This document shows, piece by piece, positions 6,639-19,371 of a stretch of 64,000 nucleotides of DNA; position 1 is the stretch's first letter; each line of letters begins with the position of its first letter. The notes under the pieces were generated by a model. It saw only the letters and a list, made by a program, of their open reading frames with translations. It searched no databases and had not been told where the DNA came from. The translations under genes and the position numbers were made by a program. Where the stretch lies: the IMG/VR virus record IMGVR_UViG_3300043399_000877, positions 1 to 64,000 of that record; one strand, given 5' to 3'.

Positions 6639-6641
6639 TTT

Positions 6642-6887
6642 TTAATCCTTTATCATGTATCTGCCATATTTCATAGACAGAAAAGTTTGCTCTCGTTCAG
6701 TAAACTGGCTCCAGTCTATCTGGGAAACCCATTCATCGTAACTCATGGGCGTGTTGTTTAGATAAAACGCTGAACGACCATCTGGGAATATCACTGCTGG
6801 CCCAGTTTCATTATGTAGCCCACCACGGGCTACATAGAGAACGGAACCGTCACTTGTTGTTATTGGCGTTGCGTTTTTTCCATTCAT
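6642..6887 (-). CDS. Hypothetical protein
   Basis: LHNETGPAVIFPDG repeat-like motif common in phage proteins; start uncertain. Confidence 0.6.
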   Translation of the reverse strand: MNGKNATPITTSDGSVLYVARGGLHNETGPAVIFPDGRSAFYLNNTPMSYDEWVSQIDWSQFTEREQTFLSMKYGRYMIKD

Positions 6888-7212
6888 CTTCTTTGAACTT
6901 TTTTACATCAACTATTGCTGCTTTGAGGGTTTCGGCATAGTTAAGTGCCGATTGCTCTTTAAGAACAATAGTAGTTTCCATTTCAGCATAGCCCTTTGTA
7001 AGAATCTGCCAAATTTGACTCCAGCGATTACGCTGCCACCATTTGGTATGATTTTTCATATACACATTAACTTGTACACCAAAATCATCTGCTTCAACTT
7101 CAACTTCATGGCTGCAAACGTCATTACCACAATCGCAGCGAACATGGTACCACTTGCTGTCGCCCCACTCGTTGGTTTTAAGAATGCCTTCTGCTGGCCG
7201 TTGTGCTCGCAT
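6850..7212 (-). CDS. Hypothetical protein
   Basis: 120-aa ORF in operon context, CDCGNDVCSH motif. Confidence 0.7.
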   Translation of the reverse strand: MRAQRPAEGILKTNEWGDSKWYHVRCDCGNDVCSHEVEVEADDFGVQVNVYMKNHTKWWQRNRWSQIWQILTKGYAEMETTIVLKEQSALNYAETLKAAIVDVKKFKEDEWKKRNANNNK

Positions 7213-7215
7213 CGT

Positions 7216-7587
7216 TTACTCCAAAGGAACTTCTGTCAGTCCGTGTTCACGGTCCAGGTATTTGTATTCTACCTTGACTGGCTCGAATTGCTCGAGATAG
7301 CGGAAGATTATACTGGTATCCAAAGGACCGCAAGTATAAACATCCAGTTGCAACAGTCCGGGATCGGTTTCGTCCCACACATGCATGGCTACATGACTGG
7401 TCTCGATAATTGCAGCAACAGTGAGACCACGATTGCCCACGACATCCAGGTATTTTGCAAAAGGTCCAATCAAGACCTTCATGCCGATATCTCGAATGAG
7501 ATCCCCGATCCATTCAACGATCCGCCCTTCGTCACGGGGAGGATTTTTAACTTCTGCTCTAACAACCAAATGCTTATGTACTAACAT
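7216..7587 (-). CDS. speD: S-adenosylmethionine decarboxylase proenzyme
   Basis: IETSHVAMHVWDE...LQLDVYTCG, AdoMetDC self-cleavage and catalytic motifs. Confidence 0.85.
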   Translation of the reverse strand: MLVHKHLVVRAEVKNPPRDEGRIVEWIGDLIRDIGMKVLIGPFAKYLDVVGNRGLTVAAIIETSHVAMHVWDETDPGLLQLDVYTCGPLDTSIIFRYLEQFEPVKVEYKYLDREHGLTEVPLE

Positions 7588-7804: not shown

Positions 7805-8287
7805 CTAAATATATACTCTTACGTCAGTAATACCGCTAGTGCCAACACTATAGGAGTCGCTGAACTTTGTCAATACATTTTTTAGTTCTGCATCAGAAAC
7901 GCGATATAGTTCGCGTTGTCCTTGACTGCCGACAAAATGATGGTCTTTTAACAACTTGTGAAATACAGATTCTAAATGCCAGCTGTCACGATCAGTTTCA
8001 ACCATTATTTGTGCATATATTCTAAAATCTATACCGGATTGATTCCGTCCACGAGCTATGGTTTCTGTATATTTTGCTCGTCCCATTTTCACAGGGCCGC
8101 GAGCAAGAATTCCAGTTTCATGATCGTGTAAATGCGCTCTACCAATGTAAACGCAGTATTCTGCGTTTTCCGGCGTCTCAGTTCTACCTGCTGGTATCCC
8201 TTCGTCAAGTCTTCGTTGTTTTAACTCTTTATACCCTTTGCCTTGCATCACCATACCATTTACTATACCCCAATTTTTCAAATACAC
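7805..8287 (-). CDS. Hypothetical protein, GIY-YIG/T5orf172-like
   Basis: VYIGRA...VKMGRA...LESVFH...RELY pattern. Confidence 0.55.
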   Translation of the reverse strand: MYLKNWGIVNGMVMQGKGYKELKQRRLDEGIPAGRTETPENAEYCVYIGRAHLHDHETGILARGPVKMGRAKYTETIARGRNQSGIDFRIYAQIMVETDRDSWHLESVFHKLLKDHHFVGSQGQRELYRVSDAELKNVLTKFSDSYSVGTSGITDVRVYI

Positions 8288-8882
8288 TGTCCGGTATTGA
8301 GGCGTTGACTATTGCCACTTGTTGAGCAGTAAGTCTGACCGGTCTTTGATCGAGATAATACTCAATCATACTATCCTGAAAACCCTCGGACATAAACAAC
8401 GATCCGGGTTCAGGAACTTGCCAAATCACGCGATCGCGGGAAACTGGCAAACGTTCTCTAAGGCGCTCACGGCCTTGATAGGTTACTATGTCCTCGTAAC
8501 GCAGCAACAGCACGTTGGGCTTGTCAGCGAGCGCGAGCCAGCGCTCTGCGTGTAGGGCGTACAGTGCAGCTAGCCTGCGCAAGTTAATGCTGTCGTGCCC
8601 AGCTAGAGCCTCTGCGTCTGTGCTGTCTTGCAGCCCATAGTCATGAAAACAAACCAGCATGTCTGCTGGTTCTCTAAAAACCACACTCTCTGTCCAAGTG
8701 TAGGGGTTTTTGTATATTAACAATACTGTTTCTTGAGTTTGTTTTATCTCTTCTGGAACTTCTAGACTGTGTTTCCAGGTTCCAGGTCCATTGAGCCAAC
8801 CGGCTGAGAAAGTATTTCTCAGCAGGTGGTCTAAGAAAGTTGTTCCTGAACGTTGTAATCCGAAAGTATAATGTTTAAACAT
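8229..8882 (-). CDS. Sulfotransferase-like protein
   Basis: PAPS-binding-like FGLQRSGTTFL, YKNPYTW, LRYEDI. Confidence 0.7.
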   Translation of the reverse strand: MFKHYTFGLQRSGTTFLDHLLRNTFSAGWLNGPGTWKHSLEVPEEIKQTQETVLLIYKNPYTWTESVVFREPADMLVCFHDYGLQDSTDAEALAGHDSINLRRLAALYALHAERWLALADKPNVLLLRYEDIVTYQGRERLRERLPVSRDRVIWQVPEPGSLFMSEGFQDSMIEYYLDQRPVRLTAQQVAIVNASIPDSVFEKLGYSKWYGDARQRV

Positions 8883-8902
8883 GCATTATTTATTGTCGGT
8901 TA

Positions 8903-8989
8903 TGGTGCCCGTGGAGGGACTTGAACCCCCACTCCTGTTACGGAAACGGATTTTGAATCCGCCGCGTCTACCAATTCCACCACACGGGC
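8903..8989 (-). tRNA. tRNA-Leu(CAA)
   Basis: Cloverleaf GCCCGTG...GCGGA-TT-CAA-AA-TCCGT, long variable arm, encoded CCA. Confidence 0.95.
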
Positions 8990-9235
8990 AAATATTTTTC
9001 GAAGCCGGTATCAGCTCAATCTCTAGTAGAAATTTAACGGGCCCAGCTGCTTTCTGACAACTATGTCGTCTGTTTTTCCACCGTTTAAGTCAGTCCTAGA
9101 ATAGCAACCGCATTGCGGTATCCTGACTTCACTTCGAAATTTGTTTAGTGTTGCACGAGCTAAAACTTATAGTTTATTGCCGGATTCTTGTGCACCATCG
9201 TCCTCACACCCCCCTAGGTGCGGCGCAACACTATC

Positions 9236-9313
9236 TTGGCGACCTGTACGGGGATTGAACCCGTGATCTCTAGCGTGACAGGCTAGCGTCTTCAACCACT
9301 CGACTAACAGGCC
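9236..9313 (-). tRNA. tRNA-Asp(GTC)
   Basis: CTAGC-CT-GTC-AC-GCTAG, T-loop TTCAAT, CCA. Confidence 0.95.
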
Positions 9314-9318
9314 AATTT

Positions 9319-9409
9319 TGGCGGATGGTGGAGGATTCGAACCTCCGCCAGGCTATTAACCTGGACTCCCTTTCCAGGGGAGTATAATAAGCCACTCTAA
9401 CAACCATCC
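9319..9409 (-). tRNA. tRNA-Ser(GGA)
   Basis: CTCCC-CT-GGA-AA-GGGAG, long variable arm, GCCA end. Confidence 0.93.
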
Positions 9410-9416
9410 TGAAATC

Positions 9417-9492
9417 TGGTGCGGGATGAGGGATTCGAACCCCCGACATTTTCGGTGTAAACGAAACGCTACTACCACTGAGCTAATCCCGC
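9417..9492 (-). tRNA. tRNA-Val(TAC)
   Basis: TTTCG-TT-TAC-AC-CGAAA, CCA. Confidence 0.95.
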
Positions 9493-9519
9493 GTTATATT
9501 TAACATACACTAGACACGC

Positions 9520-9795
9520 TTAGTTGTCTAGTGTTTTTTCACTTGCAGTTTTATACTTTTCCAAGTATTCGTAAACCTGCTCGTAGGTCTCAAACATTCG
9601 TGTTCCCTGTTTTGACATCACACGAACGGTGGACCCAAAACACTGTATTAGGCCAAATCCCGGATATCTTCCGTTACCCAACCGTCTAGTGTTCCATCTA
9701 TTGCGTCTAGGAACCGGGTCCCTAAACTCGTGTTCTATGTTTAATAGTTCTGCGCATCGGGCGTAGAACGCTTTCTTCTCTTCTCTCGTTTTCAT
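9520..9795 (-). CDS. Hypothetical protein
   Basis: True start MKTREEKK at 9795; the longer track ORF begins inside tRNA-Ser. Confidence 0.7.
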   Translation of the reverse strand: MKTREEKKAFYARCAELLNIEHEFRDPVPRRNRWNTRRLGNGRYPGFGLIQCFGSTVRVMSKQGTRMFETYEQVYEYLEKYKTASEKTLDN

Positions 9796-9797
9796 CT

Positions 9798-9887
9798 TGG
9801 CGGACAGGGTGGGATTCGAACCCACGGTACCCTTGCGGGTACGCTGGTTTTCAAGACCAGAGCCTTAAACCACTCGGCCACCTGTCC
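9798..9887 (-). tRNA. tRNA-Ser(TGA)
   Basis: CTGGT-CT-TGA-AA-ACCAG, long variable arm, GCCA. Confidence 0.95.
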
Positions 9888-10643
9888 TTATCTTTTATTT
9901 ATCAAATCCTCGACATAGCATCTATCAACATAATGATTAACACCAGTATCTACCGTAAAATGTGTCCTCGGTTGGTTCTTCATTATCCATAGCTCGTATG
10001 CATGCCTCTCTGATTCTGCTATTACTTTTGTGGGAGTGTAGCTGTATATATCAGTGGGTTTTGGAAGTTTACGTATGTAATCGTTCCTTGCCCACCATAC
10101 ATTTCCACTTGTTATAGTGTCCCCAGTTTCTTTAGACTGAAGATCGCGAACACAGACAACATCATGATCTACTAGATGCTTTATACATCGAGTCCATTCA
10201 GTTATTGTAAAATGGTCTAATACCTCTCGCCAATTCCACACATTGGTACTGGTACCAGTCATACCTTTGGAATGTGTATATAAAACATATCCATCGTTAT
10301 TTTGGCAGTGTTCATGCAAATAGTCTAACGTCTGTCCTTCGTAAAGATTCTTTTGACTTATGTCCCTGACTTCTAAGACTCTTATAAACGGATATCTGGC
10401 GTTAACGTAGTTGACTACTTTTTCACAAAACGGTATATTATCTCCACCGTTTTCAGGAAAAAATCCACCGCCGTATTCGTCAGTTTCCCACCACATGGGC
10501 ATGCTTACACACAAATTCAAGTCAGCTGCCTCGTGCAATCGTGCTTGTGTTATTAGACGCATTTGCGCATCAAACATCCAGTGCCAGCGTAGTCCGCGGC
10601 TATCTGGCGGAATAAACAAATGGTAAAACAATTCTATTTTCAT
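9888..10643 (-). CDS. Hypothetical protein, possible glycosyltransferase-like
   Basis: YVLYTHSKG and SGNVWWARNDYIRKLP motifs seen in phage glyco-islands; AT-rich. Confidence 0.55.
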   Translation of the reverse strand: MKIELFYHLFIPPDSRGLRWHWMFDAQMRLITQARLHEAADLNLCVSMPMWWETDEYGGGFFPENGGDNIPFCEKVVNYVNARYPFIRVLEVRDISQKNLYEGQTLDYLHEHCQNNDGYVLYTHSKGMTGTSTNVWNWREVLDHFTITEWTRCIKHLVDHDVVCVRDLQSKETGDTITSGNVWWARNDYIRKLPKPTDIYSYTPTKVIAESERHAYELWIMKNQPRTHFTVDTGVNHYVDRCYVEDLINKR

Positions 10644-10657
10644 TACGATATTTATTT

Positions 10658-10781
10658 TGGCGCCGGGCGGGGATTACTGCCTCCTGACTTCTCATCGAAG
10701 GGTCATGACCCTCTCAAAGCCATTTTCTCCATTCGCCTTTGGGTCATGACTCCCATCAGCCACACCTATGTGATACCCAGC
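10658..10781 (-). ncRNA. tRNA-like RNA with enlarged central domain
   Basis: GCTGGGT/GCCCGGC 7-bp acceptor + G + CCA, degenerate T-arm, central stem built from two GGGTCATGAC(C/T)C palindromes. Confidence 0.55.
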
Positions 10782-10862
10782 TAACTTAATTGGAAGAACA
10801 GTCTCGGAATCGGAGCAGTGCCAGCACCGCGTCCAGTGGGTCGGTAACACGAAAACTGTTCT

Positions 10863-11489
10863 TCAAGTTAAGTTTTTTAGTGCAGTTATTATCTGGTCTC
10901 TAGTCCAAATACACACATTTCGTTTTACAAACGACGGAAGAGTGTCATTTATAGAAAACACTGGATCAGGAAAATTAAATGGGTGTTTTTTAAAGTTAAG
11001 CTCTGCATAACCGCCAGTCGTTATGTTTACATTTTCTGCAGGAGTATCGTGGCAGGTAGTAAACAGAAGTGGCGTACCACTTCTTAAAAAATTATTTAAC
11101 GTTGCATATATGTCTTTGAAAGACATATGAAACATGCAATCTCTACAAAGCATCATATCTGCTTGCGGTAACGGGTCAACTGTTATATCCATAACTCTAA
11201 GATCCAGGTTTGGAAACTTAGCCCGGTTTTTTTCTATCAAAAAATCAACTACGTCGGCACCGATATACTTTATATCAAGGGTGTCAACTAATGTTCCCAT
11301 CCACGTAAGGTCACCACATCCAGCATCAAAAAGTGTTTTTACATTAAACTGCTCGATTATGCCGGGAAAGGCTGATCTTAATTGTTCTGTGTACCATAAA
11401 GAAGATCCGGGACCACTCAAAGGTGTATCACCCTGTCCGCCCCATTCTTCATTTTTGTATATTTTTGAAAATATTTCTTTATTGCTCAT
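10863..11489 (-). CDS. Class I SAM-dependent methyltransferase
   Basis: SGPGS, LFDAGCGD, YIGADVV, DMMLCRDC motifs. Confidence 0.85.
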   Translation of the reverse strand: MSNKEIFSKIYKNEEWGGQGDTPLSGPGSSLWYTEQLRSAFPGIIEQFNVKTLFDAGCGDLTWMGTLVDTLDIKYIGADVVDFLIEKNRAKFPNLDLRVMDITVDPLPQADMMLCRDCMFHMSFKDIYATLNNFLRSGTPLLFTTCHDTPAENVNITTGGYAELNFKKHPFNFPDPVFSINDTLPSFVKRNVCIWTRDQIITALKNLT

Positions 11490-11508
11490 ACAATATTTAG
11501 TCGTTTTT

Positions 11509-12520
11509 GCATAGCTTGAGATTACAGCATGCTTCGAGTGCCTTTCTGGAGTACCACCGGCCTTGCGAGCCGTGTTGCCAGTTTATCCACTAAAGCCAGT
11601 TACGGTCATTCAGTATCACTCATGGTCGCCTTGTTGAGGAGTGGCATTTCTCCTGTCGCACGTTGCTATTCGTCCATCAATCCTTCGCCTGCCTTGCGAG
11701 CAGTTCACTTCCGCTAAGAAGTTACGCTATCTTTCCGAACAACTACATCAGCCTTGCGAGCATCCGTAGACCACATTCTCTTTCGAGTGTGGTATTAGAC
11801 CACTTTCACAACGTACCGGGACAGTCTTTCGCTTTTGAGTCAATAGTAGGACTTGAACCTACAGTCGACGGTTCCATAAAACCGTTGCATTACCATTATG
11901 CAATATTGCGAACCTACTTCGATGTGCTGTCCCAGTTGCACCATGTCTTGTTAGACACAGTATACAACACACCGACTGTCTTTCAGCTTGCGGCTTACTC
12001 AACCTTACTTCACGAGTCCGGGGCCTAACCCTTCTTCGCTTGTAATGCTACCTAGCCTTTGCTTGCGGGCTCAGACAGTGTAGCTACCTGTTGATATTCA
12101 GCACTCGTTAGTTTGGCTGAAAGCTGTTCGGGCGCCAACCCTCTTACCACTCACCGACTGGCTCTGTGGCTATCCTTTCGGACAACTCTCCTAACTTAAT
12201 GCCTACCGCCATTCTACTGACGGGACTTGCTTTCGCGTCATTGCGAGTCAAGTCTAATCCAGGCTTGTATGAACGAACCATTGCTGGTGCCAGTTTATAG
12301 GAAACCTGGCCTTGGGTGTGTTACCACACTTATTCTAGTGACGTCATACCGCCAATCTTTAACACAAAGCCCACGTTTCACAACGTTAACTTTGCGAGTC
12401 TCTGTTTTTAACTGTACCCCAAAACGTTGCCAATTGACTGGCTGGTTATACCTTGTTGGGTAGGATACGGATAAACTCCGTTTTTTGCCACATACAGTTA
12501 AAAACAGAGCGTTTACTCTG
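11509..12520 (-). ncRNA. Large structured ncRNA, GOLLD-like candidate
   Basis: ~1 kb with no credible minus-strand ORF, many GNRA-capped hairpins (GCTCGCAAGGC three times, CCGAAAGG, CTCGAAAG), perfect 17-bp stem 12400-12416/12493-12509, embedded tRNA-like domain, own promoter + boxA. Family identity not confirmed by a covariance search. Confidence 0.6.
11839..11910 (-). tRNA. Degenerate tRNA-His-like element embedded in the large ncRNA
   Basis: D-arm GCAT-AATGGTA-ATGC, ACGGT/ACCGT stem with 8-nt loop TTTATGGA, T-arm GTAGG-TTCAAGT-CCTAC; weak acceptor, no CCA. Confidence 0.6.
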
Positions 12521-12524
12521 TTTG

Positions 12525-12542
12525 CTAAATTTTCAAAGAGCG
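12525..12542 (-). promoter_or_regulatory. rrn-type boxA antitermination element
   Basis: CGCTCTTTGAAAATTTAG vs E. coli rrn boxA TGCTCTTTAACAATTTA, ~25 nt after the promoter. Confidence 0.7.
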
Positions 12543-12568
12543 TGTAACTACTGTTACGTTATGTTGTT

Positions 12569-12596
12569 AATATAGCAGCTAGTGCAGCAATGTCAA
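12569..12596 (-). promoter_or_regulatory. Sigma70-type promoter for the large ncRNA
   Basis: GTTGTTGACA-N16-TATATTAACAAC; nearly identical flanks at 12755-12782. Confidence 0.75.
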
Positions 12597-12754
12597 CAAC
12601 TATTTTGGTCTTGTTGCGGACTGTGTTTTTCTTTGCACAAAAATGTAAGGAACAGTCTTTGCAACGTCGTTTTAGTATACCGCGCAGTGTGTTTTTTCAT
12701 CCAAAGAAAGTATTTTAAGGAACACTGTTTGCGGCGTCGTTTTGTCGTGTTGTT

Positions 12755-12782
12755 AATATAGCAGCTCTTGCAAGTTTGTCAA
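12755..12782 (-). promoter_or_regulatory. Sigma70-type promoter driving hairpin units 3-4
   Basis: GTTGTTGACA-N16-TATATTAACAAC. Confidence 0.75.
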
Positions 12783-12791
12783 CAACTAAAT

Positions 12792-12875
12792 TGGTACACA
12801 CATCGTCTGCAGAATTGAACTGCGATCAGTCCCTATAGGACTAGCACGACCTTTGTGCTATGAACGATGTGCGTA
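12792..12875 (-). ncRNA. tRNA-like RNA with 12-bp acceptor-like stem and ACCA end
   Basis: TACGCACATCGT/ACGATGTGTGTA-CCA, T-arm GCAG-TTCAATT-CTGC, two internal hairpins AGCAC/GTGCT and GTCC/GGAC. Confidence 0.65.
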
Positions 12876-13020
12876 TAATTTAACTTGCGGCGTGTGTTTT
12901 GCTGATTTAAAGGTCAATTATTAAGGAACACGCTATGCAAGTATTGTGTAACCGGGCCGCGGATTGTGAGTTTTTTCCAAATAAAAATATAAGGAACAAT
13001 CTGTGCGGCCCGGTATTCTG

Positions 13021-14757
13021 TTAGTTCAGCAGCAGGTTTTCCAACCGGTCGTAGCTGAAGCTGCCGTAGCTGAGATCGTGATCGTATTCTACACCGTCTG
13101 CGCGATCCAAGTCGTAGCTGATGCCGGCGGCATCCAACAGTTGGCTCACAGTCCAGAAACGGCTGGTACCACGAGCAACAACAGCAGTTGACTTGTTGTC
13201 CACACTCCAACGGTTATCGTTGAGACGACCCTGGTAGACAGTGAAGGTGTTGTTGTTGACAAAACCGATCACATTACCGCGGCTATCCAGCGAACCCTTT
13301 TCGCGAATTACGACGTCCTCAATCCAACGATCCTTGCCGTCACGACCCACGACCAGTTCAAACCCAGCACCGTTGTTACCACTGAAGATGTTAACAAACA
13401 GGCCGTATTCGACACCGGTACTGGTCATGAATTCCATAGCACCGTTGCGAGCGCTGGTCATATCACCACTGAAGGTAACCGGATTGCTCTTGCTGTAACC
13501 ACTCCATGCACCCCAACCAGTACGATGACCGCTGCGGTCAATAGTGCTGAGATCGAGGTCATGTGCGCCCCAGTCGTCTTGCCAGTAAACACCGGCGCTG
13601 ATACGTCCACCACTCACGGTGATGTTGGTACCGTAGGGCAGGTTACCCAGTGCTTGCTTGCGGCTGATCGGAAGACCGTAATCAACAGTGCTATCCAGCA
13701 AAATACGCTTGCCCTGAAGACCAGCAAGATCGCGGCGGAGGCTAGCAACAATCATGTCACGGACACGATTCAGTCCAGCAGTATCACGAACCGCGCGGCC
13801 TGTTTCAAGATGCACTTTACCGTTGCGAACAATAAATGCGTCGGTATCCTGACCGGTGTGCTTGTACTCGATCAAGTTCAGGATCTTGAAGCGGTCACGA
13901 AGGCTAACCTTCTCAAGCGCCGTCTGGTCTGCACGACCAGCCAGTGCCAGTGCAAGGAACCGCTTGCCGATCGGTTCGTGAACCGGGACATGGTTGCGCT
14001 TGCTGAGTCGGGTGATACGGTTAATCACGTTACGATTGACAGCTCGCTTTGCAGCAAGGATCAACGGCTTGTGGCGGTTGAACACCTGTGCCAGCGGCAT
14101 TTCGTGTGCTTCTAGAAACTTGGTAGTAATCTGGCTGCAAACTTTGATGCTGTCAATAACCTGACGGCTCTTGATCAGCAGGGTTTTTCCGGTTGCAACC
14201 TTCACCATATAACGAACAGCGTCGTCACCGTTGTTGAAACGGTCGCGATTGGGATTGAACAGTTCAACCCGCAGTTCGTTATTACGAATCTGGTTTACAT
14301 CGTAGTCGATGTTGAAGTCCTGGATGATCTGACGAACAAGATCAGAATCTTTAACCGGAGCATTTGCATAAATCAGTGCGCGAACACGATCAGCAAGTTG
14401 CTCAACAGTGATACCCTGAACATAGGTCATAACCATAACCTGGCCTTCTTCAACTTCCAGGTCAAACAGGCCCGGACGATTGAGACCGTAAACTTCCACG
14501 TAGTGGAGCAGTTGCTTGGTCACCAGCTGAACAAGGCTGGCAGTATCACGCTCAACACGCCCGAAAAGGGTGCGAATAGCGAGCGGACTGCGGGTTGCCA
14601 TCAACACAGCCCTATGAACCGAGTTGGGTTCAAAGTCGGTGACAACAGCCAGTTTTTCAACCAACGAAGTGTTAACCACGCCGGTCGTCGCTCCGGGTTC
14701 TACAACCAGAGCATTGAACAGTTTAAGAACGTTTGCTTGTGCAGTCTGATTGTACAT
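13021..14757 (-). CDS. Conserved large-phage protein, helical N-terminal region with TerD-like C-terminal domain
   Basis: Start MYNQ at 14757 (RBS AAGGAG); C-terminal GVYW...HDLDLS...TGW...VTFSGDMTSARNGAMEF resembles TerD-family motifs; GC-richer codon usage typical of highly expressed genes. Confidence 0.6.
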   Translation of the reverse strand: MYNQTAQANVLKLFNALVVEPGATTGVVNTSLVEKLAVVTDFEPNSVHRAVLMATRSPLAIRTLFGRVERDTASLVQLVTKQLLHYVEVYGLNRPGLFDLEVEEGQVMVMTYVQGITVEQLADRVRALIYANAPVKDSDLVRQIIQDFNIDYDVNQIRNNELRVELFNPNRDRFNNGDDAVRYMVKVATGKTLLIKSRQVIDSIKVCSQITTKFLEAHEMPLAQVFNRHKPLILAAKRAVNRNVINRITRLSKRNHVPVHEPIGKRFLALALAGRADQTALEKVSLRDRFKILNLIEYKHTGQDTDAFIVRNGKVHLETGRAVRDTAGLNRVRDMIVASLRRDLAGLQGKRILLDSTVDYGLPISRKQALGNLPYGTNITVSGGRISAGVYWQDDWGAHDLDLSTIDRSGHRTGWGAWSGYSKSNPVTFSGDMTSARNGAMEFMTSTGVEYGLFVNIFSGNNGAGFELVVGRDGKDRWIEDVVIREKGSLDSRGNVIGFVNNNTFTVYQGRLNDNRWSVDNKSTAVVARGTSRFWTVSQLLDAAGISYDLDRADGVEYDHDLSYGSFSYDRLENLLLN

Positions 14758-14831
14758 CGTTGTCTCCTTTGTATGCACACTTTATAACAGTTGTCGCGTG
14801 TTGCGTCAAGTGTTATTTTGAAGTCTTTATT

Positions 14832-15227
14832 TTAGTCTTTATGGTGTTGCCAAAGTTTGTCTGAACCACCTAGGTGACCCCAGTCAGAGTCGACAACCAT
14901 TTTTGAACTAATACCGCCGCGCGGGCGGAAAGTAATTTCAAGACGAATACGAAATGGATCGTAGGCTTCCATCAAATGCTTATACATCACGTCTGTAGCC
15001 CTCTCGTATGAAATTACGGTATCTCGATATTGTATCAGATACTCTTTGAGAGATTTTAGTTCAATTGTTTTTTCTTTACCATGAAACCAAATCTTGATAT
15101 GTCCAAAGTCTGGTTGGTTTTTCACCCCAAGAAATGTAAATTCCGGAATATCAATCTGTTGTTCATATCCAGCGGCAGCATTTGGTAAAGATTTTAGTGT
15201 ATTTTCAATTGTATTCCAAAGTTTCAT
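14832..15227 (-). CDS. queF: QueF-like T-fold protein (catalytic Cys replaced)
   Basis: PEFTFLGVKNQPDFG, ELKSLKEY QueF motif, ISYE, FRPRGGISS. Confidence 0.75.
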   Translation of the reverse strand: MKLWNTIENTLKSLPNAAAGYEQQIDIPEFTFLGVKNQPDFGHIKIWFHGKEKTIELKSLKEYLIQYRDTVISYERATDVMYKHLMEAYDPFRIRLEITFRPRGGISSKMVVDSDWGHLGGSDKLWQHHKD

Positions 15228-15802
15228 TACTGCTCCGTTTTGTTATTGAGTCTTTGTTTGAGTCTTTTCTTATAAGTTTCTGTATTGCAATAAGGCTCAA
15301 TAGCCGCAATTACCGCAGTTTCAACATCGCTGATGGTTTTTGGATCATCTGACATGTTCCAAACCAATACCGGAATATCGGAAATTTTAATCAGCGGTTG
15401 ATACTGATGTTCTGTTATTACAGGTTCTACTCGACGGCGTCCAACCGTCTTATAGTATTCCGGATACTCTGGCATGTCTGAATAAATGAATCGGGCGACA
15501 CCTTCGCGCCATCCCTGAGGTGTTTCAATCCTGGGTTGCACTTTGGGTTTCAAGGGCCCGTACAACTCAGCGGGATTTGCTCTCAACTTACTACCATGGT
15601 TTTTATAAAACCTTCCAAAAACTGTCGCCGTTGGCGAGTGACACTTACCAAAGTAAAAATTCACTTCAGGATAAATGTAATAGAGTCCGCGATGCACACC
15701 GTGCAGGCCTGCTTCGAGGGATCCTACAGTAGATTCATAAGGACGTTGTTTACGTCCAGTGAATCGTTCAACGAGATTGATAATTGTGTCTACGTGTTGC
15801 AT
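15227..15802 (-). CDS. Hypothetical protein (GIY-YIG-like)
   Basis: GLYYIY...FYFGK...ETAVIAAIEPYCN. Confidence 0.55.
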   Translation of the reverse strand: MQHVDTIINLVERFTGRKQRPYESTVGSLEAGLHGVHRGLYYIYPEVNFYFGKCHSPTATVFGRFYKNHGSKLRANPAELYGPLKPKVQPRIETPQGWREGVARFIYSDMPEYPEYYKTVGRRRVEPVITEHQYQPLIKISDIPVLVWNMSDDPKTISDVETAVIAAIEPYCNTETYKKRLKQRLNNKTEQ

Positions 15803-15846
15803 TTTGCTAATCTAGCAGTGCCGTCAGCAAATGTCAACAAGTTTTA

Positions 15847-15922
15847 TGGTGCTGCTAGACGGGTTCGAACCGCCGACCTGATGATTACTAATCAACTGCT
15901 CTACCAGCTGAGCTACAGCAGC
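15847..15922 (-). tRNA. tRNA-Thr(AGT)
   Basis: GCTGCTG...TTGA-TT-AGT-AA-TCA, Thr-type body, ACCA. Confidence 0.88.
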
Positions 15923-15927
15923 GTTAT

Positions 15928-16002
15928 TGGAGCGGGCGATGGGATTCGAACCCACGACCTGAGGCTTGGCAAGCCGCCGCTCTACCCCTGAGCTACGCCC
16001 GC
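15928..16002 (-). tRNA. tRNA-Gly(GCC)
   Basis: GCGGGCG...TT-GCC-AA, U73 discriminator + CCA. Confidence 0.93.
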
Positions 16003-16613
16003 ATATTTTTATTTAGTTCTCTCATTTTCATCAACGTCTTTTTTGGACCGCCAGATGAGTGTAAATGAATTATGTTTTTGCTATAGTCTATACCAGTAAA
16101 TTTTTCATATATCGGAGCCTGTTGAACAATATCAGTAATTGCCTTTCCTGAACGATACATGCTAATATAGATATCTTGTTCATAATCATACTTGTTATAA
16201 TTCCATTTACTGACATGCTCAAAAACCTGGTCCCATATGCTACTATCCATATCATGCGGGAAATATCTTACTCCACAGTTATGTCTACAACCAGCCACAA
16301 AATCTTCATTAAAAACCTGTGTAGGTTTTATACACAGTGTGTCTGGATCGGTATAAAGTATGTTGCATTTTTCATTTTTCCATATTTTATACGTTTTCTC
16401 GAGAGTAAAAATAAAAGATTCTTGGAGAGTGTCTTTAGTACCGGTTAAATGTATTAGAGACCACTCTCCGAGAAGGTTTTCTTTAAAAGAGCTTATACTT
16501 AACTTTTGCATTTTTTTATAATCTTTGTAATTAGTTAAACCAAAAACAAAATCATCAAAAACGGCTGTTTCACCAGGAATTTCATATGTGCTCTTTAACA
16601 TGTAGTTTTTCAT
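15993..16613 (-). CDS. Putative GT-A glycosyltransferase-like protein
   Basis: ILYTDPDTL (DxD), IIHLHSS; very AT-rich. Confidence 0.55.
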   Translation of the reverse strand: MKNYMLKSTYEIPGETAVFDDFVFGLTNYKDYKKMQKLSISSFKENLLGEWSLIHLTGTKDTLQESFIFTLEKTYKIWKNEKCNILYTDPDTLCIKPTQVFNEDFVAGCRHNCGVRYFPHDMDSSIWDQVFEHVSKWNYNKYDYEQDIYISMYRSGKAITDIVQQAPIYEKFTGIDYSKNIIHLHSSGGPKKTLMKMRELNKNMRA

Positions 16614-16616
16614 ATT

Positions 16617-16838
16617 TTATTTATCTATATCCAACACGTCTAATTCTTGACCGCCAAGAGTCAGTAAAAACAGTGTGTTTTTATTGTCAGGATACAGATA
16701 TATAATGTATTCATTGCCCGTTCTTTCAAACGGGCCATGCCGTAGGCGATACCTTTTTATAAGGTTCTGGACTGTTCTAAGACTGTGATATGGAACTTTA
16801 ATTCTCATATAGGTCATCATAGTCATCAATCTCGTCAA
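16617..16838 (-). CDS. Hypothetical protein
   Basis: Small ORF, start uncertain. Confidence 0.55.
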   Translation of the reverse strand: MTRLMTMMTYMRIKVPYHSLRTVQNLIKRYRLRHGPFERTGNEYIIYLYPDNKNTLFLLTLGGQELDVLDIDK

Positions 16839-17331
16839 GCCAATCGTCTCCGGTCAGTGCCGATCGATCGTACTGCTTGTAGTAATCCTCGTTTGGTTTA
16901 AGGATTCTCACATCTGGTATTTGCATTTGCAGAATCAAAAAATGCCGCATGCTTGGAATATCGGTGATATACCAAGTCGTCCCACATCCGCCACCTGCCA
17001 GTTTTATGGCGCCGTGTGCCATGTTGGCGACGGCAGTTCTAAGTTTACTACCGTATTCGGTAATAACCCTCACTGTTTGACTTTTGACATATGCTGCATG
17101 ATCCTCGGCCGTTGCAGGCCTAATTGTTGCGCAATTATCGTCGTCGATTGTTACTGTACAATCTCGGACTTTAATTGCTCCCTTGGTGTGTGCGTTATCC
17201 GGCGTCTCTTTTGTACTCCACGGAACCGAGCAGTCCACATGGTTTACATAAAAGGTTTCCCCTCGCAATTTAAGCACCCACATCGGGATAGTTGCATCTT
17301 CCAGATGTTTTTTGTTGAAGTGGAAAACCAC
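16798..17331 (-). CDS. Hypothetical phage protein
   Basis: VFHFNKKHLED.TIPMWVLK...YVNHV conserved phage-type N-terminus. Confidence 0.75.
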   Translation of the reverse strand: MVFHFNKKHLEDATIPMWVLKLRGETFYVNHVDCSVPWSTKETPDNAHTKGAIKVRDCTVTIDDDNCATIRPATAEDHAAYVKSQTVRVITEYGSKLRTAVANMAHGAIKLAGGGCGTTWYITDIPSMRHFLILQMQIPDVRILKPNEDYYKQYDRSALTGDDWLDEIDDYDDLYEN

Positions 17332-17687
17332 GTCTCTACAAGGTATAGCAATCTACGACATTTCTTTCTCCTTTTGTCATATATGGTGACAGCCTAACAG
17401 TCGATCTTAATGGGTATTAGCACTGGCAGGTTCCCATTTCCTGCATCTCTTCGCTTTCGCTACTTTACCGTTTCTGGTGTGTGAGGCGGGTGTTCTCACC
17501 TCAGTGCCGCAGGGTTTCTGGTTTGCTGTCTCTACTACAAACCCTTTTTCGAATTGGCGACCACTGTTAGCCGCTGTTGCGACCCCCAACACGTTGTCCT
17601 GCCCCATCGGGGGCCTTGGCGTGTTTTTGTATTGGGATTTAGCATCCAAGTATCCAATCGCGACAGTGGGGGCGCATGGATACTGAT

Positions 17688-17762
17688 TGGCGCGTGTGGA
17701 GGGACTCGAACCCACAACTGTACGCTTTAGAGGCGTCTGCTCTACCATTGAGCTACACATGC
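17688..17762 (-). tRNA. Amber suppressor-type tRNA (anticodon CTA)
   Basis: GCATGTGTAGCTCAATGGTAGAGC-AGACGC-CT-CTA-AA-GCGT...GTGGGTTCGAGTCCCTC-CACACGC-G-CCA. Confidence 0.85.
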
Positions 17763-18095
17763 ATTATCTTGTAAGGCAAGTTCTTAAACCCGTGATACAG
17801 GTTCGGCTTGCCCGCCCGTGGTTTTCACACCACGGACTTGACCACTGAGTTATCAGCCCCATTTTTATACACCCTGGGTCTAAAGCAGGGTGTTTTACAA
17901 CACCGGTCCTATGCCGGTGAGCCGCAGCCGGACCGGCGGACTATTACCCCCTGCCCTCCCGAAACTATATTCCGGTACATTGAGCGGCGTTGTAAAAGTG
18001 GAGTTGGCAAGGGTTCCGACCCCTACTTTAGTTGCAACCTACGCCTGCCCGGCGATCCTAGCTGCAACTGACAATCCGTGTCAATCCAACATAAT

Positions 18096-18172
18096 TGGTC
18101 TGTCTGAGAGGACTCGAACCTCCGACCTATGGTACCCAAAACCATCGCACTACCAGGCTGTGCTACAGACAG
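18096..18172 (-). tRNA. tRNA-Pro(TGG)
   Basis: ATGGT-TT-TGG-GT-ACCAT, C1-G72, ACCA. Confidence 0.93.
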
Positions 18173-18190
18173 TCTATATAATTATCCATG

Positions 18191-18871
18191 TCAACAATTT
18201 TTTGTAACTTTAAAAAACAATTGCATTTCGTTGTCTTTTAAAACTTGTATATCACCTGATATAGTGTACATATCTAACAAATTCCTCAAGTAAGGAACAT
18301 CTGCGTCGTCAAATAACACTACGTCATTGGGAGCGGCTAAATCTATCACATTGGAGATATCTGCATTAGCATCATGCACAGTATGTGATCCATCAATTAC
18401 CCATCCAATTTTTTTGTTTCTAATTTCTGGATAAAAATTAAAAATATTTGGTAACACATTTTTTGAGTCGCCAATTCTTAATTCAATTCTATCGCCATAG
18501 ATCTGTTTTAGGTAATTGAAGCACGGAACTGTATATCTGTGAATGCCAACATCTATGCCCACATAGTTCAAAGATTTATTTGCAGTTAGGGCCAACATGG
18601 CGCTGTGTCCACCGTTAAATCCAATTTCAACCACAACATCACATACAGATGCAAACATTGCATAAAGTTTACGTTTATCAGAAAAACCTTTATGTAATGA
18701 TGATCTATCTTTTTCTAGATCATAATAAAAAATATTTCCTTCTAAAGGTTCTTTTGTTTTTGATATTGTTTTGTTTAACCCATGTAGTATTTTTTTATAC
18801 TCTTGATAAAAAACTTCTTCATGGTTACATTGTTCATTTAACAGATGGCGTATTTCATTATTAATAATCAT
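18191..18871 (-). CDS. Class I SAM-dependent methyltransferase (Methyltransf_24-like)
   Basis: VEIGFNGGHS, GIDVG, GDS, VIDGSH, LFDD; AT-rich. Confidence 0.8.
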   Translation of the reverse strand: MIINNEIRHLLNEQCNHEEVFYQEYKKILHGLNKTISKTKEPLEGNIFYYDLEKDRSSLHKGFSDKRKLYAMFASVCDVVVEIGFNGGHSAMLALTANKSLNYVGIDVGIHRYTVPCFNYLKQIYGDRIELRIGDSKNVLPNIFNFYPEIRNKKIGWVIDGSHTVHDANADISNVIDLAAPNDVVLFDDADVPYLRNLLDMYTISGDIQVLKDNEMQLFFKVTKNC

Positions 18872-18889
18872 TTAAAATTCCATAGTAAG

Positions 18890-18961
18890 AAGGATATTTG
18901 GATTCGAACCAAAATCACATGAATCTAAATCATGCCACTCTATCCACTTGAGTTATATCCT
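18890..18961 (-). tRNA. Atypical short-arm tRNA with TAG anticodon (possible pseudo-tRNA)
   Basis: AGGATAT/ATATCCT acceptor, D-loop AGTGGATA, CATGA-TT-TAG-AT-TCATG, short variable loop, no CCA. Confidence 0.6.
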
Positions 18962-18991
18962 GTCACTATGTATTTACGCAGATTATATAAA

Positions 18992-19066
18992 TGGCTGGGG
19001 ATGGAGGGGTCGAACCTCCGTATGTCGGGACCAAAGCCCGATGCCTTACCACTTGGCTAATCCCCA
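18992..19066 (-). tRNA. tRNA-Gln(TTG)
   Basis: TGGGGAT...TCGGG-CT-TTG-GT-CCCGA, GCCA. Confidence 0.95.
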
Positions 19067-19073
19067 AGAATTT

Positions 19074-19265: not shown

Positions 19266-19280
19266 ATTTTCCTCTTGTTA

Positions 19281-19365: not shown

Positions 19366-19371
19366 GTTCTA

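What the first reader, a model, noticed from the sequence alone, without database searches (positions are those of the whole stretch)
12610..13014. Array of four covarying RNA scaffolds that appear to display different anticodon-loop mimics
Seen in sequence (minus strand): four ~60-nt units share one architecture. Outer stem ending GC, then A-N-A opposite a single C, a 6-bp stem ending GT, invariant TCCTTA, a small variable hairpin, an A-tract with C, and the return strands. The stems change sequence but stay paired in every unit: GATTGT/ACAATC, GCGTGT/ACACGC, CAGTGT/ACACTG, GACTGT/ACAGTC; outer stems ACCGGGCCGC/GCGGCCCGGT, ACTTGC/GCAAGT, GCCGC/GCGGT, GTTGC/GCAAC. In three units the variable hairpin has a 7-nt loop with U at position 2 and a purine at position 6, as in a tRNA anticodon loop: unit 1 (12951-13014) AT-TTG-GA = Gln UUG; unit 3 (12680-12735) TT-TGG-AT = Pro UGG; unit 4 (12613-12665) GT-GCA-AA = Cys GCA. 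Unit 2 (12883-12942) has TTGA-CCTTTAAA-TCAG, resembling the Lys UUU arm, but with an 8-nt loop. Units 1-2 start right after the stop of the 578-aa gene and units 3-4 have their own promoter. Inference: a family of small phage RNAs in which a protein-binding scaffold presents anticodon stem-loops, perhaps as decoys for host anticodon nucleases (PrrC, RloC, VapC, PARIS AriB class) or as sponges for synthetases or modification enzymes. Caveat: the A/U-rich inner stems are weak, so the anticodon reading is the least certain part. I know of no named family matching this motif.
Basis: partly seen in the sequence, partly recalled or inferred. Interest (0 to 1): 0.93.

Follow-up and report, generated by a model that had tools for sequence, protein, structure and literature searches.

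The report
Phage tRNA-mimic RNA scaffolds with partner protein
The four repeats are real members of a widespread, apparently uncatalogued family of small structured phage RNAs that always sit beside one unknown protein gene inside phage tRNA clusters and display tRNA-like pieces, much as bacterial Y RNAs do for the Ro60 protein.

Summary
Four about 55-nt units on the minus strand share a two-helix scaffold: P1, AAA opposite a bulged C, P2 ending GU/AC, then single-stranded UCCUUA. No Rfam family matches them.

A covariance model finds over 230 further units in other phage contigs. Base-pair covariation is very strong: about 93-94% of cells paired, score 0.71-0.72 against at most 0.19 for slid controls.

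The units are almost always on the same strand as, and next to, homologues of the 578-aa gene at 13021-14757. That gene belongs to a large phage family with no Pfam, PHROG, NCBIfam, PADLOC or PDB match; its neighbours by feature and by fold carry TerD or 'tellurium-resistance-like' labels. In the window's subfamily the units lie downstream of the gene (30 of 31 loci); in the wider family, upstream (69 of 78 loci). Cultured cyanophages S-CRM01 and S-CBWM1 carry the pair.

The variable insert holds exact anticodon-loop copies (20 of 205 units against 2.4 expected), UUGGA loops, inert tetraloop hairpins, or whole tRNA-like bodies that partly match Rfam YrlA.

Best reading: a Y-RNA-like ribonucleoprotein whose scaffold binds the protein and displays tRNA mimics. 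The decoy function is untested. For units 1 and 3 the anticodon reading remains ambiguous.

The parts
13021..14757 (-). Gene for the partner protein: 578 aa from the ATG at 14757 (the mechanical ORF runs from a GTG at 14778, 585 aa). Predicted helical N-terminal region, a beta-sandwich at about residues 355-525, and a C-terminal helical tail.
   Evidence: ORF. Start inferred from homologues of 577-578 aa and the Atlas record. At least 333 close homologues and 1315 clusters at 50% identity. No Pfam, PHROG, NCBIfam, PADLOC or PDB sequence hit. AF2 model with pLDDT 84. BFVD and ESM Atlas neighbours carry TerD or 'tellurium resistant like' labels.
12951..13014 (-). Scaffold RNA unit 1. P1 is 10 bp here. 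The insert UAUUUUUAUUUGGAAAAAACUC belongs to the UUGGA class and is Gln-like if read as the loop AUUUGGA.
   Evidence: z -7.1; 70.8 bits; 64 bits. An orthologous unit with a compensatory P2 change is in L133.
12883..12942 (-). Scaffold RNA unit 2. The insert has the hairpin UUGA / CCUUUAAA / UCAG, with an 8-nt loop.
   Evidence: (71.8 bits). The orthologue in L133 has GACCUUUCAAUCAG. Related hairpins UUGA-CUUGAAA-UCAA and UUGA-CUAUAAA-UCAG occur in L218 and L216.
12792..12874 (-). tRNA-like cloverleaf without an anticodon, lying inside the array. It has a 12-bp closing stem, a D-like arm, a middle arm with a 3-nt loop, a T arm with UUCAAUU, and a 3' ACCA. Membership in the system is uncertain.
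   Evidence: ARAGORN calls an odd 'tRNA-Tyr(ata)'. There is no Rfam tRNA hit. Fold energy -33.4 kcal/mol, z -5.2. It is not conserved at this place in relatives.
12755..12782 (-). Sigma-70-like promoter ahead of units 3-4.
   Evidence: TTGACA, 16 nt, TATATT with an extended TG, 11 of 12. This is a consensus match only.
12678..12736 (-). Scaffold RNA unit 3. The insert holds the hairpin UUUC / UUUGGAU / GAAA (UUGGA class, Pro-like if read as an anticodon loop).
   Evidence: 67.6 bits; 65 bits. A near-identical insert with two compensated P2 pairs is at L168 9746-9804.
12612..12666 (-). Scaffold RNA unit 4. The insert UUUUU / GUGCAAA / GAAAA is Cys-like.
   Evidence: 64.2 bits; 66 bits. Orthologues with AUGCAAA are in L133 and L168. 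The phage tRNA at 19599-19674 has the loop GUGCAAG.
12569..12596 (-). Second, nearly identical promoter-like site. It marks the 3' limit of the array and probably drives the next transcript, towards GOLLD.
   Evidence: 11 of 12. GOLLD lies at 11513-11975.

Best explanation
The four units belong to a large family of small phage non-coding RNAs. Each has a constant scaffold: P1 of about 5 bp ending G-C; a 3-nt A-rich bulge opposite one invariant bulged C; a 6-bp P2 ending G-C and U-A; then single-stranded UCCUU(A). A variable insert closes the hairpin.

The scaffold is most likely the binding handle for the protein encoded next to it, the 578-aa product of 13021-14757. The insert is the displayed part. 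It is a tRNA fragment mimic (anticodon-loop-like hairpins, UUGGA loops) or, in relatives, a whole tRNA-like body.

The system therefore works like a Ro60/Y-RNA particle: one protein and several alternative RNAs, each presenting a different tRNA-like face to some tRNA-binding factor, as decoy, tether or specificity adaptor. It is made from the phage's tRNA-cluster transcripts and, for units 3-4, from their own promoter.

Shown here: the structure, the family, the gene linkage, the tRNA-cluster context, and the tRNA-like content of the inserts. Inferred: that the protein binds the scaffold, that discrete small RNAs accumulate, and what the displayed loops bind.
For: Structure:
- In 83 units near close homologues, 93.9% of cells pair, with 276 double-sided changes and a covariation score of 0.71 against 0.07-0.12 for slid controls. 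The bulged C and UCCUU are present in 83 of 83 units.
- An independent set of 132 distinct units scores 93.4% paired and 0.72, against at most 0.19 for slid controls.

Gene linkage:
- All 6 other IMG/VR loci of the close family have units right after the gene (L132 confirmed).
- So do 30 of 31 metagenome or assembly loci with downstream DNA.
- In the wider protein family, 149 units lie in 69 of 78 loci, all on the gene's strand: 129 upstream, 15 downstream, 5 elsewhere. Six of the nine empty loci lack upstream DNA.
- A strand-aware regex finder gives 285 hits on the gene strand and 2 on the other.
- Cultured cyanophages S-CRM01 (g174) and S-CBWM1 (gp22) have both the gene and the units, inside their tRNA arrays.

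Partner-specific core: units within one locus share the same variant of the 6-nt core in 81% of pairs, against 28% between loci. Their variable P2 positions are only 49% identical, against 38% between loci.

tRNA content of the inserts:
- Exact anticodon loops are enriched 8-fold over shuffles.
- Permuted or nested tRNA-like bodies occur in L172, L240, L215, L209, L242, L223 and L275.
- Rfam YrlA matches the tRNA-like part at 29-41 bits, with E down to 1e-5.

Trans-acting character: units 3-4 have their own promoter, and units also occur away from the gene inside tRNA arrays (L120, L125, L155, L170).
Against: - There is no direct evidence that the protein binds RNA. It has no recognisable RNA-binding domain, and Foldseek finds no solved structure like it.
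- Adjacency could reflect cis-regulation of the gene.
- Most inserts are short, A/U-rich and thermodynamically weak. Only 78 of 205 fold into any hairpin at 37 C.
- For the UUGGA class the flanks pair only modestly above chance: at least 4 bp in 0.51 of units against 0.32 in controls.
- Only 10-20% of inserts look like anticodon loops, and tetraloop-capped inserts mimic nothing.
- The shared core variant within a locus could arise from gene conversion rather than from a shared protein partner.
- No expression data were available.
Confidence: 0.55

Rival explanations
1. Anti-defence decoys. The displayed anticodon-like loops soak up host anticodon nucleases or other tRNA-targeting defence effectors. 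The protein stabilises the decoys or helps to inactivate the attacker. This is a special case of the best explanation, not exclusive of it.
For: - Loops identical to Asn, Lys, Ile, Ser and Gln anticodon loops are enriched.
- The system sits in the tRNA clusters of large lytic phages.
- The close protein family is absent from 185,579 bacterial and archaeal genomes.
- Several different loops occur per array.
- From my own knowledge, not tested here: phage tRNAs are known to counter tRNA-cleaving defences such as PARIS, PrrC and retron-linked nucleases.
Against: - Most units lack an anticodon-like loop.
- P3 stems are weak and A/U-rich, unlike real anticodon stems.
- The commonest loop class (UUGGA) and the tetraloop inserts do not fit.
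- There is no link to any known defence or counter-defence protein family.
Confidence: 0.2
2. Cis-acting elements of the neighbouring mRNA. The units would be UTR structures that stabilise, process or autoregulate the protein's transcript, for example as operator sites for the protein's own feedback. They would have no trans function.
For: The units are always on the gene's strand and within tens to hundreds of nt of it. In L127 the array lies between the stop codon and a terminator.
Against: - The array lies 3' of the gene in one subfamily and 5' in the other.
- Units 3-4 have their own promoter.
- Units occur far from the gene within tRNA arrays.
- Inserts carry whole tRNA-like bodies or exact anticodon loops, which a stabiliser would not need.
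- One to seven divergent copies per locus are kept.
Confidence: 0.13
3. A type III toxin-antitoxin-like pair. The protein would act on tRNA anticodon loops as a nuclease or modifier, and the adjacent RNA array would be its pseudo-substrate inhibitor or regulator.
For: An array of RNA repeats directly upstream of a protein gene on the same strand is the ToxIN-like layout. The loops resemble the putative substrates.
Against: - The repeats are divergent in sequence, not identical.
- The protein matches no ToxN, AbiE-like or other nuclease family and no PADLOC model.
- In the window's subfamily the array follows the gene.
- The hosts are lytic phages rather than plasmids or chromosomes.
Confidence: 0.08
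4. A ligand-binding or catalytic RNA (riboswitch or ribozyme) whose conserved core is the active pocket, or a mere processing signal or remnant of tRNA genes.
For: The single-stranded core is invariant and the bulges are conserved. A QueF-like gene lies two genes upstream in the window.
Against: - No Rfam riboswitch or ribozyme matches.
- The units occur in arrays with no consistent regulated gene downstream.
- The QueF neighbour is not conserved.
- Core positions 5-6 drift between lineages (UCCUUA, UCCUAU, UCCUAA, UCCUUU).
- Strong covariation and the strict gene linkage argue against decay products.
Confidence: 0.04

Closest known systems
Bacterial and phage Y RNAs (YrlA, Rfam RF02553) with the Ro60/Rsr (TROVE) protein
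   Same: - A non-coding RNA encoded next to its protein partner.
- A closing stem with conserved bulges serves as the presumed protein handle, and a variable 'effector' module is tRNA-like.
- Several relatives of the window's units carry exactly the YrlA-type module: T arm, loop-capped acceptor stem and D arm. These are hit by RF02553 over model positions 23-88, or 1-114 in S-CRM01.
- Several different RNAs occur per locus.
   Different: - The partner protein is not Ro60. It has no TROVE or vWA Pfam hit, no PDB sequence hit, and no Foldseek match to solved structures.
- The stem has a different conserved core (AAA/C bulges, GU/AC closure, UCCUU), and all YrlA scores are below the gathering score of 69.
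- The window's four units have no Rfam hit at all.
- Most units are miniatures of about 55 nt, with only a small loop in place of the tRNA-like body, arranged in arrays of up to seven.
Type III antitoxin RNA arrays (ToxI/ToxN and relatives)
   Same: Tandem small structured RNA units lie directly beside one protein gene on the same strand. An RNA-protein partnership is inferred from the gene layout.
   Different: - ToxI repeats are near-identical in sequence and are cut out by the toxin; here only the structure and a short core are conserved.
- The protein has no similarity to known type III toxins.
- The array can lie on either side of the gene.
Phage tRNA-cluster RNAs of unknown function: GOLLD (RF02032), skipping-rope (RF02924), and the small stable RNAs of T4/T5 tRNA regions (the last from my own knowledge)
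   Same: They share the genomic habitat. GOLLD (187 bits) and skipping-rope (51 bits) lie within 1-5 kb of the array in this window, among 24 tRNA genes.
   Different: The sequence and structure are unrelated, with no model match. None of those RNAs has a dedicated neighbouring protein family as shown here.
tRNA anticodon-arm mimics in regulation (the thrS operator; T-box and tRNA-like elements) and phage tRNAs that evade or neutralise tRNA-cleaving defences (from my own knowledge)
   Same: They use an anticodon-loop look-alike to engage a tRNA-binding protein, and phage tRNA clusters are linked to conflict over host tRNAs.
   Different: Those are cis operators or full functional tRNAs. Here the loops sit on a separate conserved scaffold, in arrays, with a partner protein, and most have weak A/U stems.

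Membership tests
Y RNA / YrlA (RF02553) | Match to the Rfam covariance model at or above its gathering score (69 bits) | tested here: not met
   The four window units have no hit even at E up to 10. Relatives with tRNA-like inserts reach only 29-41 bits.
Y RNA / YrlA (RF02553) | Partner gene encoding Ro60/Rsr (TROVE domain plus vWA) nearby | tested here: not met
   The linked protein and 37 relatives show no TROVE or vWA in Pfam. There is no Ro60 in the PDB profile search or in Foldseek against the PDB.
Y RNA / YrlA (RF02553) | tRNA-like effector module (T arm, capped acceptor stem, D arm) attached to the protein-binding stem | tested here: inconclusive
   Absent from the four window units, whose inserts are 21-26 nt. 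Present in some relatives: L172 2414-2531, L240 1546-1674, L215 1421-1549, L209 1854-1982 and L242 1154-1272.
tRNA (RF00005) | Cloverleaf recognised by Rfam tRNA or ARAGORN | tested here: not met
   Neither tool calls any of the four units.
   Family level: exact real loops in 20 of 205 units against 2.35 expected. Window:
- Unit 4, GUGCAAA (G32), is close to the phage's own GUGCAAG loop.
- Unit 1 (AUUUGGA) and unit 3 (UUUGGAU) differ from the phage's Gln (CUUUGGU) and Pro (UUUGGGU) loops at 2 and 1 positions.
- Unit 2 has an 8-nt loop.
- The stems are A/U-only and are not in the MFE folds.
Type III toxin-antitoxin (ToxIN-like) | Near-identical tandem RNA repeats and a ToxN/AbiE-type endoribonuclease toxin | tested here: not met
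   The units share only structure and a short core. The protein has no Pfam or PADLOC hit.
Any Rfam 15 family (riboswitch, ribozyme, sRNA) | Covariance-model match | tested here: not met
   Scanning 8000-22000 at E up to 10 gave nothing on the minus strand of 12610-13014. The only overlapping row is a noise-level mir-651 match on the other strand. Eight related loci show no family on the scaffold itself.
TerD-domain proteins (PF02342), for the partner protein | Pfam TerD match, or a fold match to a solved TerD structure | tested here: not met
   There is no Pfam hit and no PDB fold hit. Only indirect leads exist: ESM Atlas neighbour clusters with TerD in 11-22% of members, and a BFVD match to a 'tellurium resistant like protein' (E 2.5e-17). 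Motifs such as DLDLS and SGD are conserved.

The most novel reading that the evidence does not exclude
Large tRNA-bearing phages may carry a dedicated, previously unrecognised ribonucleoprotein system. It would consist of one unknown-fold protein loaded with interchangeable mini-RNAs, each displaying a different anticodon-loop or tRNA-elbow look-alike. The array would be a modular 'tRNA-mimic cassette' that neutralises or redirects host tRNA-targeting enzymes (defence nucleases, modification enzymes or synthetases), with no homology to Ro60 particles.
Probability: 0.3. Interest if true: 0.92.

Novelty: new variant of a known kind. Interest (0 to 1): 0.86.

Why it matters
This result turns one odd repeat in a metagenomic jumbo phage into a defined RNA family with a defined protein partner.
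- **Scale.** More than 230 RNA instances were found here. The protein family has over 1,300 clusters at 50% identity and no annotation of any kind.
- **Habitat.** The pair lives in the least understood part of large phage genomes: the tRNA clusters that also hold GOLLD and skipping-rope RNAs.
- **Biology.** The system appears to be an independent version of the Y-RNA principle, a protein handle plus a tRNA-like display, miniaturised down to single loops. It links phage tRNA clusters to molecular mimicry of tRNAs.
- **Testability.** Two cultured cyanophages, S-CRM01 and S-CBWM1, carry the system, so the idea can be tested directly.
- **Annotation.** A covariance model for the scaffold would annotate hundreds of currently blank intergenic stretches and would flag the partner gene.

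Tried and rejected
1. **Loose DNA pattern in IMG/VR (17 specified bases).** It gave 118 or more loci, nearly all chance; the model scored them at most 23 bits. Stricter patterns found the true relatives.
2. **preQ1 or another riboswitch, prompted by the QueF-like neighbour.** There is no Rfam hit, the order of the stem and the A-rich segment differs from preQ1-I as I recall it, and the QueF neighbour is not conserved.
3. **Anti-Shine-Dalgarno mimic.** UCCUUA equals the 3' end of E. coli-type 16S rRNA (from my own knowledge). However, the wider family has UCCUAU, UCCUAA or UCCUUU, so the last two bases are not fixed.
4. **Self-cleaving ribozymes (HDV-like/theta, twister, pistol, hairpin), a kink-turn, or the archaeal bulge-helix-bulge.** The helices are nested with no pseudoknot, no G-A tandem follows the 3-nt bulge, and there is no Rfam hit.
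5. **CRISPR-repeat mimics or ToxI.** The units are not sequence-identical.
6. **A conserved upstream partner gene.** The neighbours differ between loci and do not align with one another.
7. **Ro60/TROVE identity of the protein.** No evidence was found.
8. **UGGN as a T-box-like partner of the tRNA NCCA end, and GUUCC plus a GG loop as a T-loop/D-loop elbow mimic.** Neither could be tested. I keep them as ideas only. The base after UGG is mostly A, which fits pairing to UCC of the core at least as well.
9. **Energy-based folding of isolated inserts.** Only 78 of 205 fold, so loop statistics were redone by stem counting against shuffles.
10. **Bacterial genomes.**
   - The close protein family is absent.
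   - The strict DNA pattern mostly hit a conserved protein-coding stretch in Flavobacterium, which I read from its translation as dnaK. These hits have no stem complementarity.
   - One true locus turned up, in a Melioribacteraceae MAG.
11. **Conservation of the window's anticodon-less tRNA-like RNA in relatives.** It was not found.
Full report
**1.

On the minus strand of 12612-13014 there are four units with one architecture. Each has an outer stem P1 ending G-C and three A-rich bases (ACA, AUA, AAA, AAA) opposite a single C. A 6-bp stem P2 follows, ending G-C and U-A. Then come the invariant UCCUUA, a variable insert of 21-26 nt, an A-rich run, and the return strands.

- A pattern for the core occurs 4 times in the window, against 0.00 expected.
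- MFE folds recover P1 and P2 in every unit, with z from -7.1 to -1.6.
- A covariance model of the four (R1) finds only these four in 64 kb. A later, better model finds the same four with all filters off.
- No Rfam 15 family matches them at E up to 10.

The array starts a few bases after the stop codon of the gene at 13021-14757. Two twin promoter-like sites (TTGACA, 16 nt, TG-TATATT) lie at 12782-12755 and 12596-12569. They bracket units 3-4.

**2. Where the window comes from**

The window is part of IMGVR_UViG_3300043399_000877, a 381,886-bp phage contig. The surrounding region is a tRNA cluster with:
- 24 ARAGORN calls;
- a GOLLD RNA at 11513-11975 (187 bits) and a skipping-rope RNA at 17418-17509;
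- a QueF-like gene at 14832-15227.

**3. The RNA is a family**

A loose DNA pattern gave only chance hits. Stricter patterns found true relatives in four other phage contigs.

In two of those contigs the units sat right behind a gene whose C-terminus resembled that of the window's protein. I therefore searched from the protein side.
- The protein has at least 333 close homologues of about 575 aa.
- Loci fetched through an alignment of 29 of them (A2) number 7 from IMG/VR (including the window's own contig) and 35 from metagenomes. Three more came from exact look-ups.
- Model R1 found arrays of 1-5 units beginning within about -40 to +160 nt of my approximate stop positions. This held in 30 of 31 loci that have downstream DNA. 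L132's single unit was confirmed with model R2.
- The one exception, L161, has a terminator and a promoter instead.

**4. Covariation**

The 83 units from these loci (A3) were aligned and counted.
- 93.9% of cells pair, with 276 double-sided changes.
- 11 of 12 pairs show compensatory change.
- The covariation score is 0.71, against 0.19 for column shuffles (0 of 500 reach it) and 0.07-0.12 for slid partners.

The alignment was fitted to the model, which favours the structure. Even so, the contrast with the slid controls is large. The stems also visibly change with compensation between orthologous units. For example, window unit 1 has GAUUGU/ACAAUC and L133 has GAAUGU/ACAUUC, with an almost identical insert.

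Invariant features are the bulged C (83 of 83), UCCUU (83 of 83), and the last two P2 pairs (81-83 of 83). A at the third bulge position occurs in 82 of 83.

**5. The partner protein**

- It has no Pfam, PHROG, NCBIfam, PADLOC or PDB sequence match, alone or as a profile.
- The AF2 model (pLDDT 84, pTM 0.58) shows a mostly helical N-terminal part, a beta-sandwich at about residues 355-525, and C-terminal helices.
- Foldseek finds no solved structure.
- Foldseek does match predicted phage proteins, one of which is named 'tellurium resistant like' (E 2.5e-17 to 3.1e-14).
- The ESM Atlas places the protein near clusters with TerD and near bacterial RING proteins of the MXAN_6230/SCO0854 family.
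- Conserved DLDLS, GW and SGD motifs fit a TerD-like metal site as I recall it. This is a lead, not a membership.
- An exhaustive profile search finds 1315 clusters at 50% identity.

The close family is absent from 185,579 bacterial and archaeal genomes. The upstream neighbours of the gene are not conserved. The conserved module is therefore the gene plus its RNA array.

**6. The linkage runs deep**

Only distant homologues (25-29% identity) exist in cultured phages: Synechococcus phages S-CRM01 (g174) and S-CBWM1 (gp22), plus Phass-1. In the two Synechococcus phages the gene lies inside the tRNA arrays. Model R2, built from the 83 units, finds scaffold units beside both genes.

Eighty IMG/VR loci of this wider protein family (A4) gave 149 units in 69 of 78 loci, all on the gene's strand.
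- 129 units lie within 1.3 kb upstream, 15 downstream and 5 elsewhere.
- Six of the nine empty loci have no upstream DNA.

These 132 distinct units again covary strongly: 93.4% paired, score 0.72 against at most 0.19 for slid partners.

A simple strand-aware finder gives 285 hits on the gene strand and 2 on the opposite strand in the protein-linked loci. It gives 9 hits, all but one without the family's other conserved features (A-rich bulge, P1 ending in GC), in 1.5 Mb of unrelated bacterial DNA counted on both strands.

The array is 3' of the gene in the window's subfamily and 5' in the rest. A purely UTR-type role is therefore unlikely.

**7. What the variable insert is**

*In the window's subfamily* the inserts fall into recurring classes that are conserved across phages whose stems have diverged:
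- loops with UUGG(A), about 36 of 83, to which units 1 and 3 belong;
- AUGCAAA-type loops (unit 4);
- CCUUUAAAU-type loops (unit 2);
- GC hairpins capped by UUCG, GNRA or 7-nt loops.

*In the wider family* many inserts are small hairpins with covarying stems. Their loops are letter-for-letter anticodon loops: CUGUUAA, CUUUUAA, CUGAUAA, CUUGAAA and UUUUGGU. CUGCUAA also occurs, but with imperfect flanking stems.

I tested the exact matches against the anticodon loops of 462 distinct tRNAs that ARAGORN calls in the same loci.

| Measure (205 short units) | Observed | Shuffles |
|---|---|---|
| Real loop closed by at least 3 bp | 20 units | 2.35 +/- 1.5 (max 8 of 300) |
| Y32-U33...R37 loops | 40 | 11.6 +/- 3.5 (max 23) |

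*Limits of the anticodon reading:*
- The most over-represented word is UUGG/UGGA, in 46-48 units against about 6 expected.
- Its flanks pair only modestly above chance.
- Real anticodon stems are GC-rich, whereas these stems are A/U-rich.

**8. Whole tRNA-like bodies**

Some units enclose a circularly permuted tRNA body: T arm, loop-capped acceptor stem and D arm. Sometimes it has a small or full anticodon arm.
- Examples are L172 2414-2531 (S-CRM01), L240 1546-1674, L215 1421-1549, L209 1854-1982 and L242 1154-1272.
- The L215 unit carries UCCG/CUGAUAA/CGGA, a textbook Ile-type arm.
- Rfam's YrlA (Y RNA-like) model matches these bodies at 29-41 bits. That is below its gathering score of 69, because the stem part differs.
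- L223 2121-2242 nests an ordinary tRNA plus ACCA inside the scaffold.

A Melioribacteraceae MAG (L275) has a protein homologue (E 7e-71) and a normal unit. It also has a tRNA in which a loop-capped scaffold appears to occupy the anticodon-arm position. I read that chimera by eye; the MFE fold did not reproduce it.

By position, the small hairpin of the short units corresponds to the anticodon arm of these bodies.

**9. The window's four units in this light**

| Unit | Proposed P3 (stem / loop / stem) | Comparison |
|---|---|---|
| 4 | UUUUU / GUGCAAA / GAAAA | Phage tRNA at 19599-19674 has the unusual Cys-type loop GUGCAAG |
| 2 | UUGA / CCUUUAAA / UCAG | 8-nt loop; close to UUGA/CUUGAAA/UCAA and UUGA/CUAUAAA/UCAG elsewhere |
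| 1 | AUUUGGA loop | Phage Gln loop is CUUUGGU |
| 3 | UUUGGAU loop | Phage Pro loop is UUUGGGU |

For units 1 and 3 the MFE fold prefers pairing UCC of the core with GGA. Their reading therefore stays open.

Between units 2 and 3 lies an anticodon-less tRNA-like cloverleaf at 12792-12874 (z -5.2). Relatives do not share it at that place.

**10. Evidence that the protein reads the scaffold**

The evidence is indirect.
- Units of one locus share the same lineage-specific version of the 6-nt core: UCCUUA, UCCUAU, UCCUAA, UCCUUU or UCCUAC/UCCUCC.
- The core is identical in 81% of within-locus pairs, against 28% between loci.
- The variable P2 positions of the same pairs are only 49% identical, against 38% between loci.

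This is what a shared locus-specific partner would produce. Gene conversion is the alternative explanation.

**11. Mechanism and rivals**

My best reading (confidence 0.55) is a Y-RNA-like ribonucleoprotein. The scaffold is the protein's handle, and the insert is a displayed tRNA look-alike that engages some tRNA-binding factor.
- The anti-nuclease decoy version (0.2) is a special case and is untested.
- Cis-regulation of the neighbouring mRNA (0.13) is weakened by four findings: the array lies on either side of the gene, units 3-4 have their own promoter, some units lie far from the gene (L120, L125, L155, L170), and some inserts are tRNA-like.
- A type III toxin-antitoxin-like pair (0.08) lacks direct support.
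- A riboswitch, ribozyme or decay product (0.04) also lacks support.

**12. Known or new**

Neither Rfam 15 nor the paper library yielded this motif or this protein-RNA pair. The library is incomplete, so prior description cannot be excluded.

The system works like Ro60/Y RNA but fails that family's defining tests: partner protein, model score and stem. I therefore file it as a new variant of a known kind. There is a 0.3 chance that it is a distinct new class of tRNA-mimic cassette.

Noticed in passing
window 11513-11975 (-): A full-length GOLLD RNA (RF02032, 187 bits, E 8e-52) with an embedded tRNA-like element at 11837-11910. It lies about 600 nt downstream of unit 4, probably behind the second twin promoter at 12596-12569.
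   Followed up: partly
window 17418-17509 (-): A skipping-rope RNA (RF02924, 51 bits, above its gathering score) in the same tRNA cluster.
   Followed up: no
window 12792-12874 (-): A tRNA-like cloverleaf with a 12-bp closing stem, a T arm, a 3' ACCA and a middle arm with only a 3-nt loop, so it has no anticodon. It sits between units 2 and 3. z is -5.2. ARAGORN calls it tRNA-Tyr(ata); Rfam tRNA does not call it. It is not conserved at this place in relatives.
   Followed up: partly
window 17688-17762 (-) and 19599-19674 (-): A tRNA with anticodon CUA (an amber-suppressor type, which ARAGORN labels 'Pyl'). Also an odd tRNA with the loop GUGCAAG (Cys-type, G at position 32) that ARAGORN leaves unassigned.
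   Followed up: partly
window 14832-15227 (-): A QueF-like gene (PF14489, E 4e-19) directly upstream of the partner-protein gene, hinting at 7-deazaguanine metabolism in this phage. The neighbourhood is not conserved in relatives.
   Followed up: partly
L120 3404-3542 and 5145-5285: Two tRNA-like genes with insertions of about 60 nt, each 3-5 nt downstream of a scaffold unit. The first contains a hairpin ACGGU/CUUCUAA/ACCGU followed by UCCUUA, that is, an Arg-type anticodon arm joined to the family's core sequence.
   Followed up: partly
L124 300-666 (= L128 about 4880-5250): A two-piece (permuted, alpha-proteobacterial type) tmRNA gene with its own promoter directly follows the two-unit array in a 62.8-kb phage contig.
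   Followed up: no
L275 (OY782765.1, Melioribacteraceae MAG), reverse strand about 5100-5280 and 5710-7560: The only bacterial-genome locus found. It holds a homologue of the partner protein (29% identity to S-CRM01 g174, E 7e-71) preceded by one normal unit. It also holds a tRNA whose anticodon arm seems to be replaced by a loop-capped scaffold. It may be a prophage or a mis-binned phage contig.
   Followed up: partly
L253-L332 (Flavobacterium genomes): The strict DNA pattern for the scaffold matches a conserved protein-coding stretch, which I read from its translation as dnaK, in dozens of Flavobacterium species. These are false positives with no stem complementarity, a caution for pattern-only searches.
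   Followed up: yes
window 12737-12750 and 12667-12680 (-): The same short leader, AAAACGAC, precedes both unit 3 and unit 4. It may be a processing site or a trace of a duplication.
   Followed up: no
window 10863-11489 (-): A weak methyltransferase-like ORF (Methyltransf_25, E 1.4e-5, just under the Pfam cut-off) immediately downstream of GOLLD.
   Followed up: no
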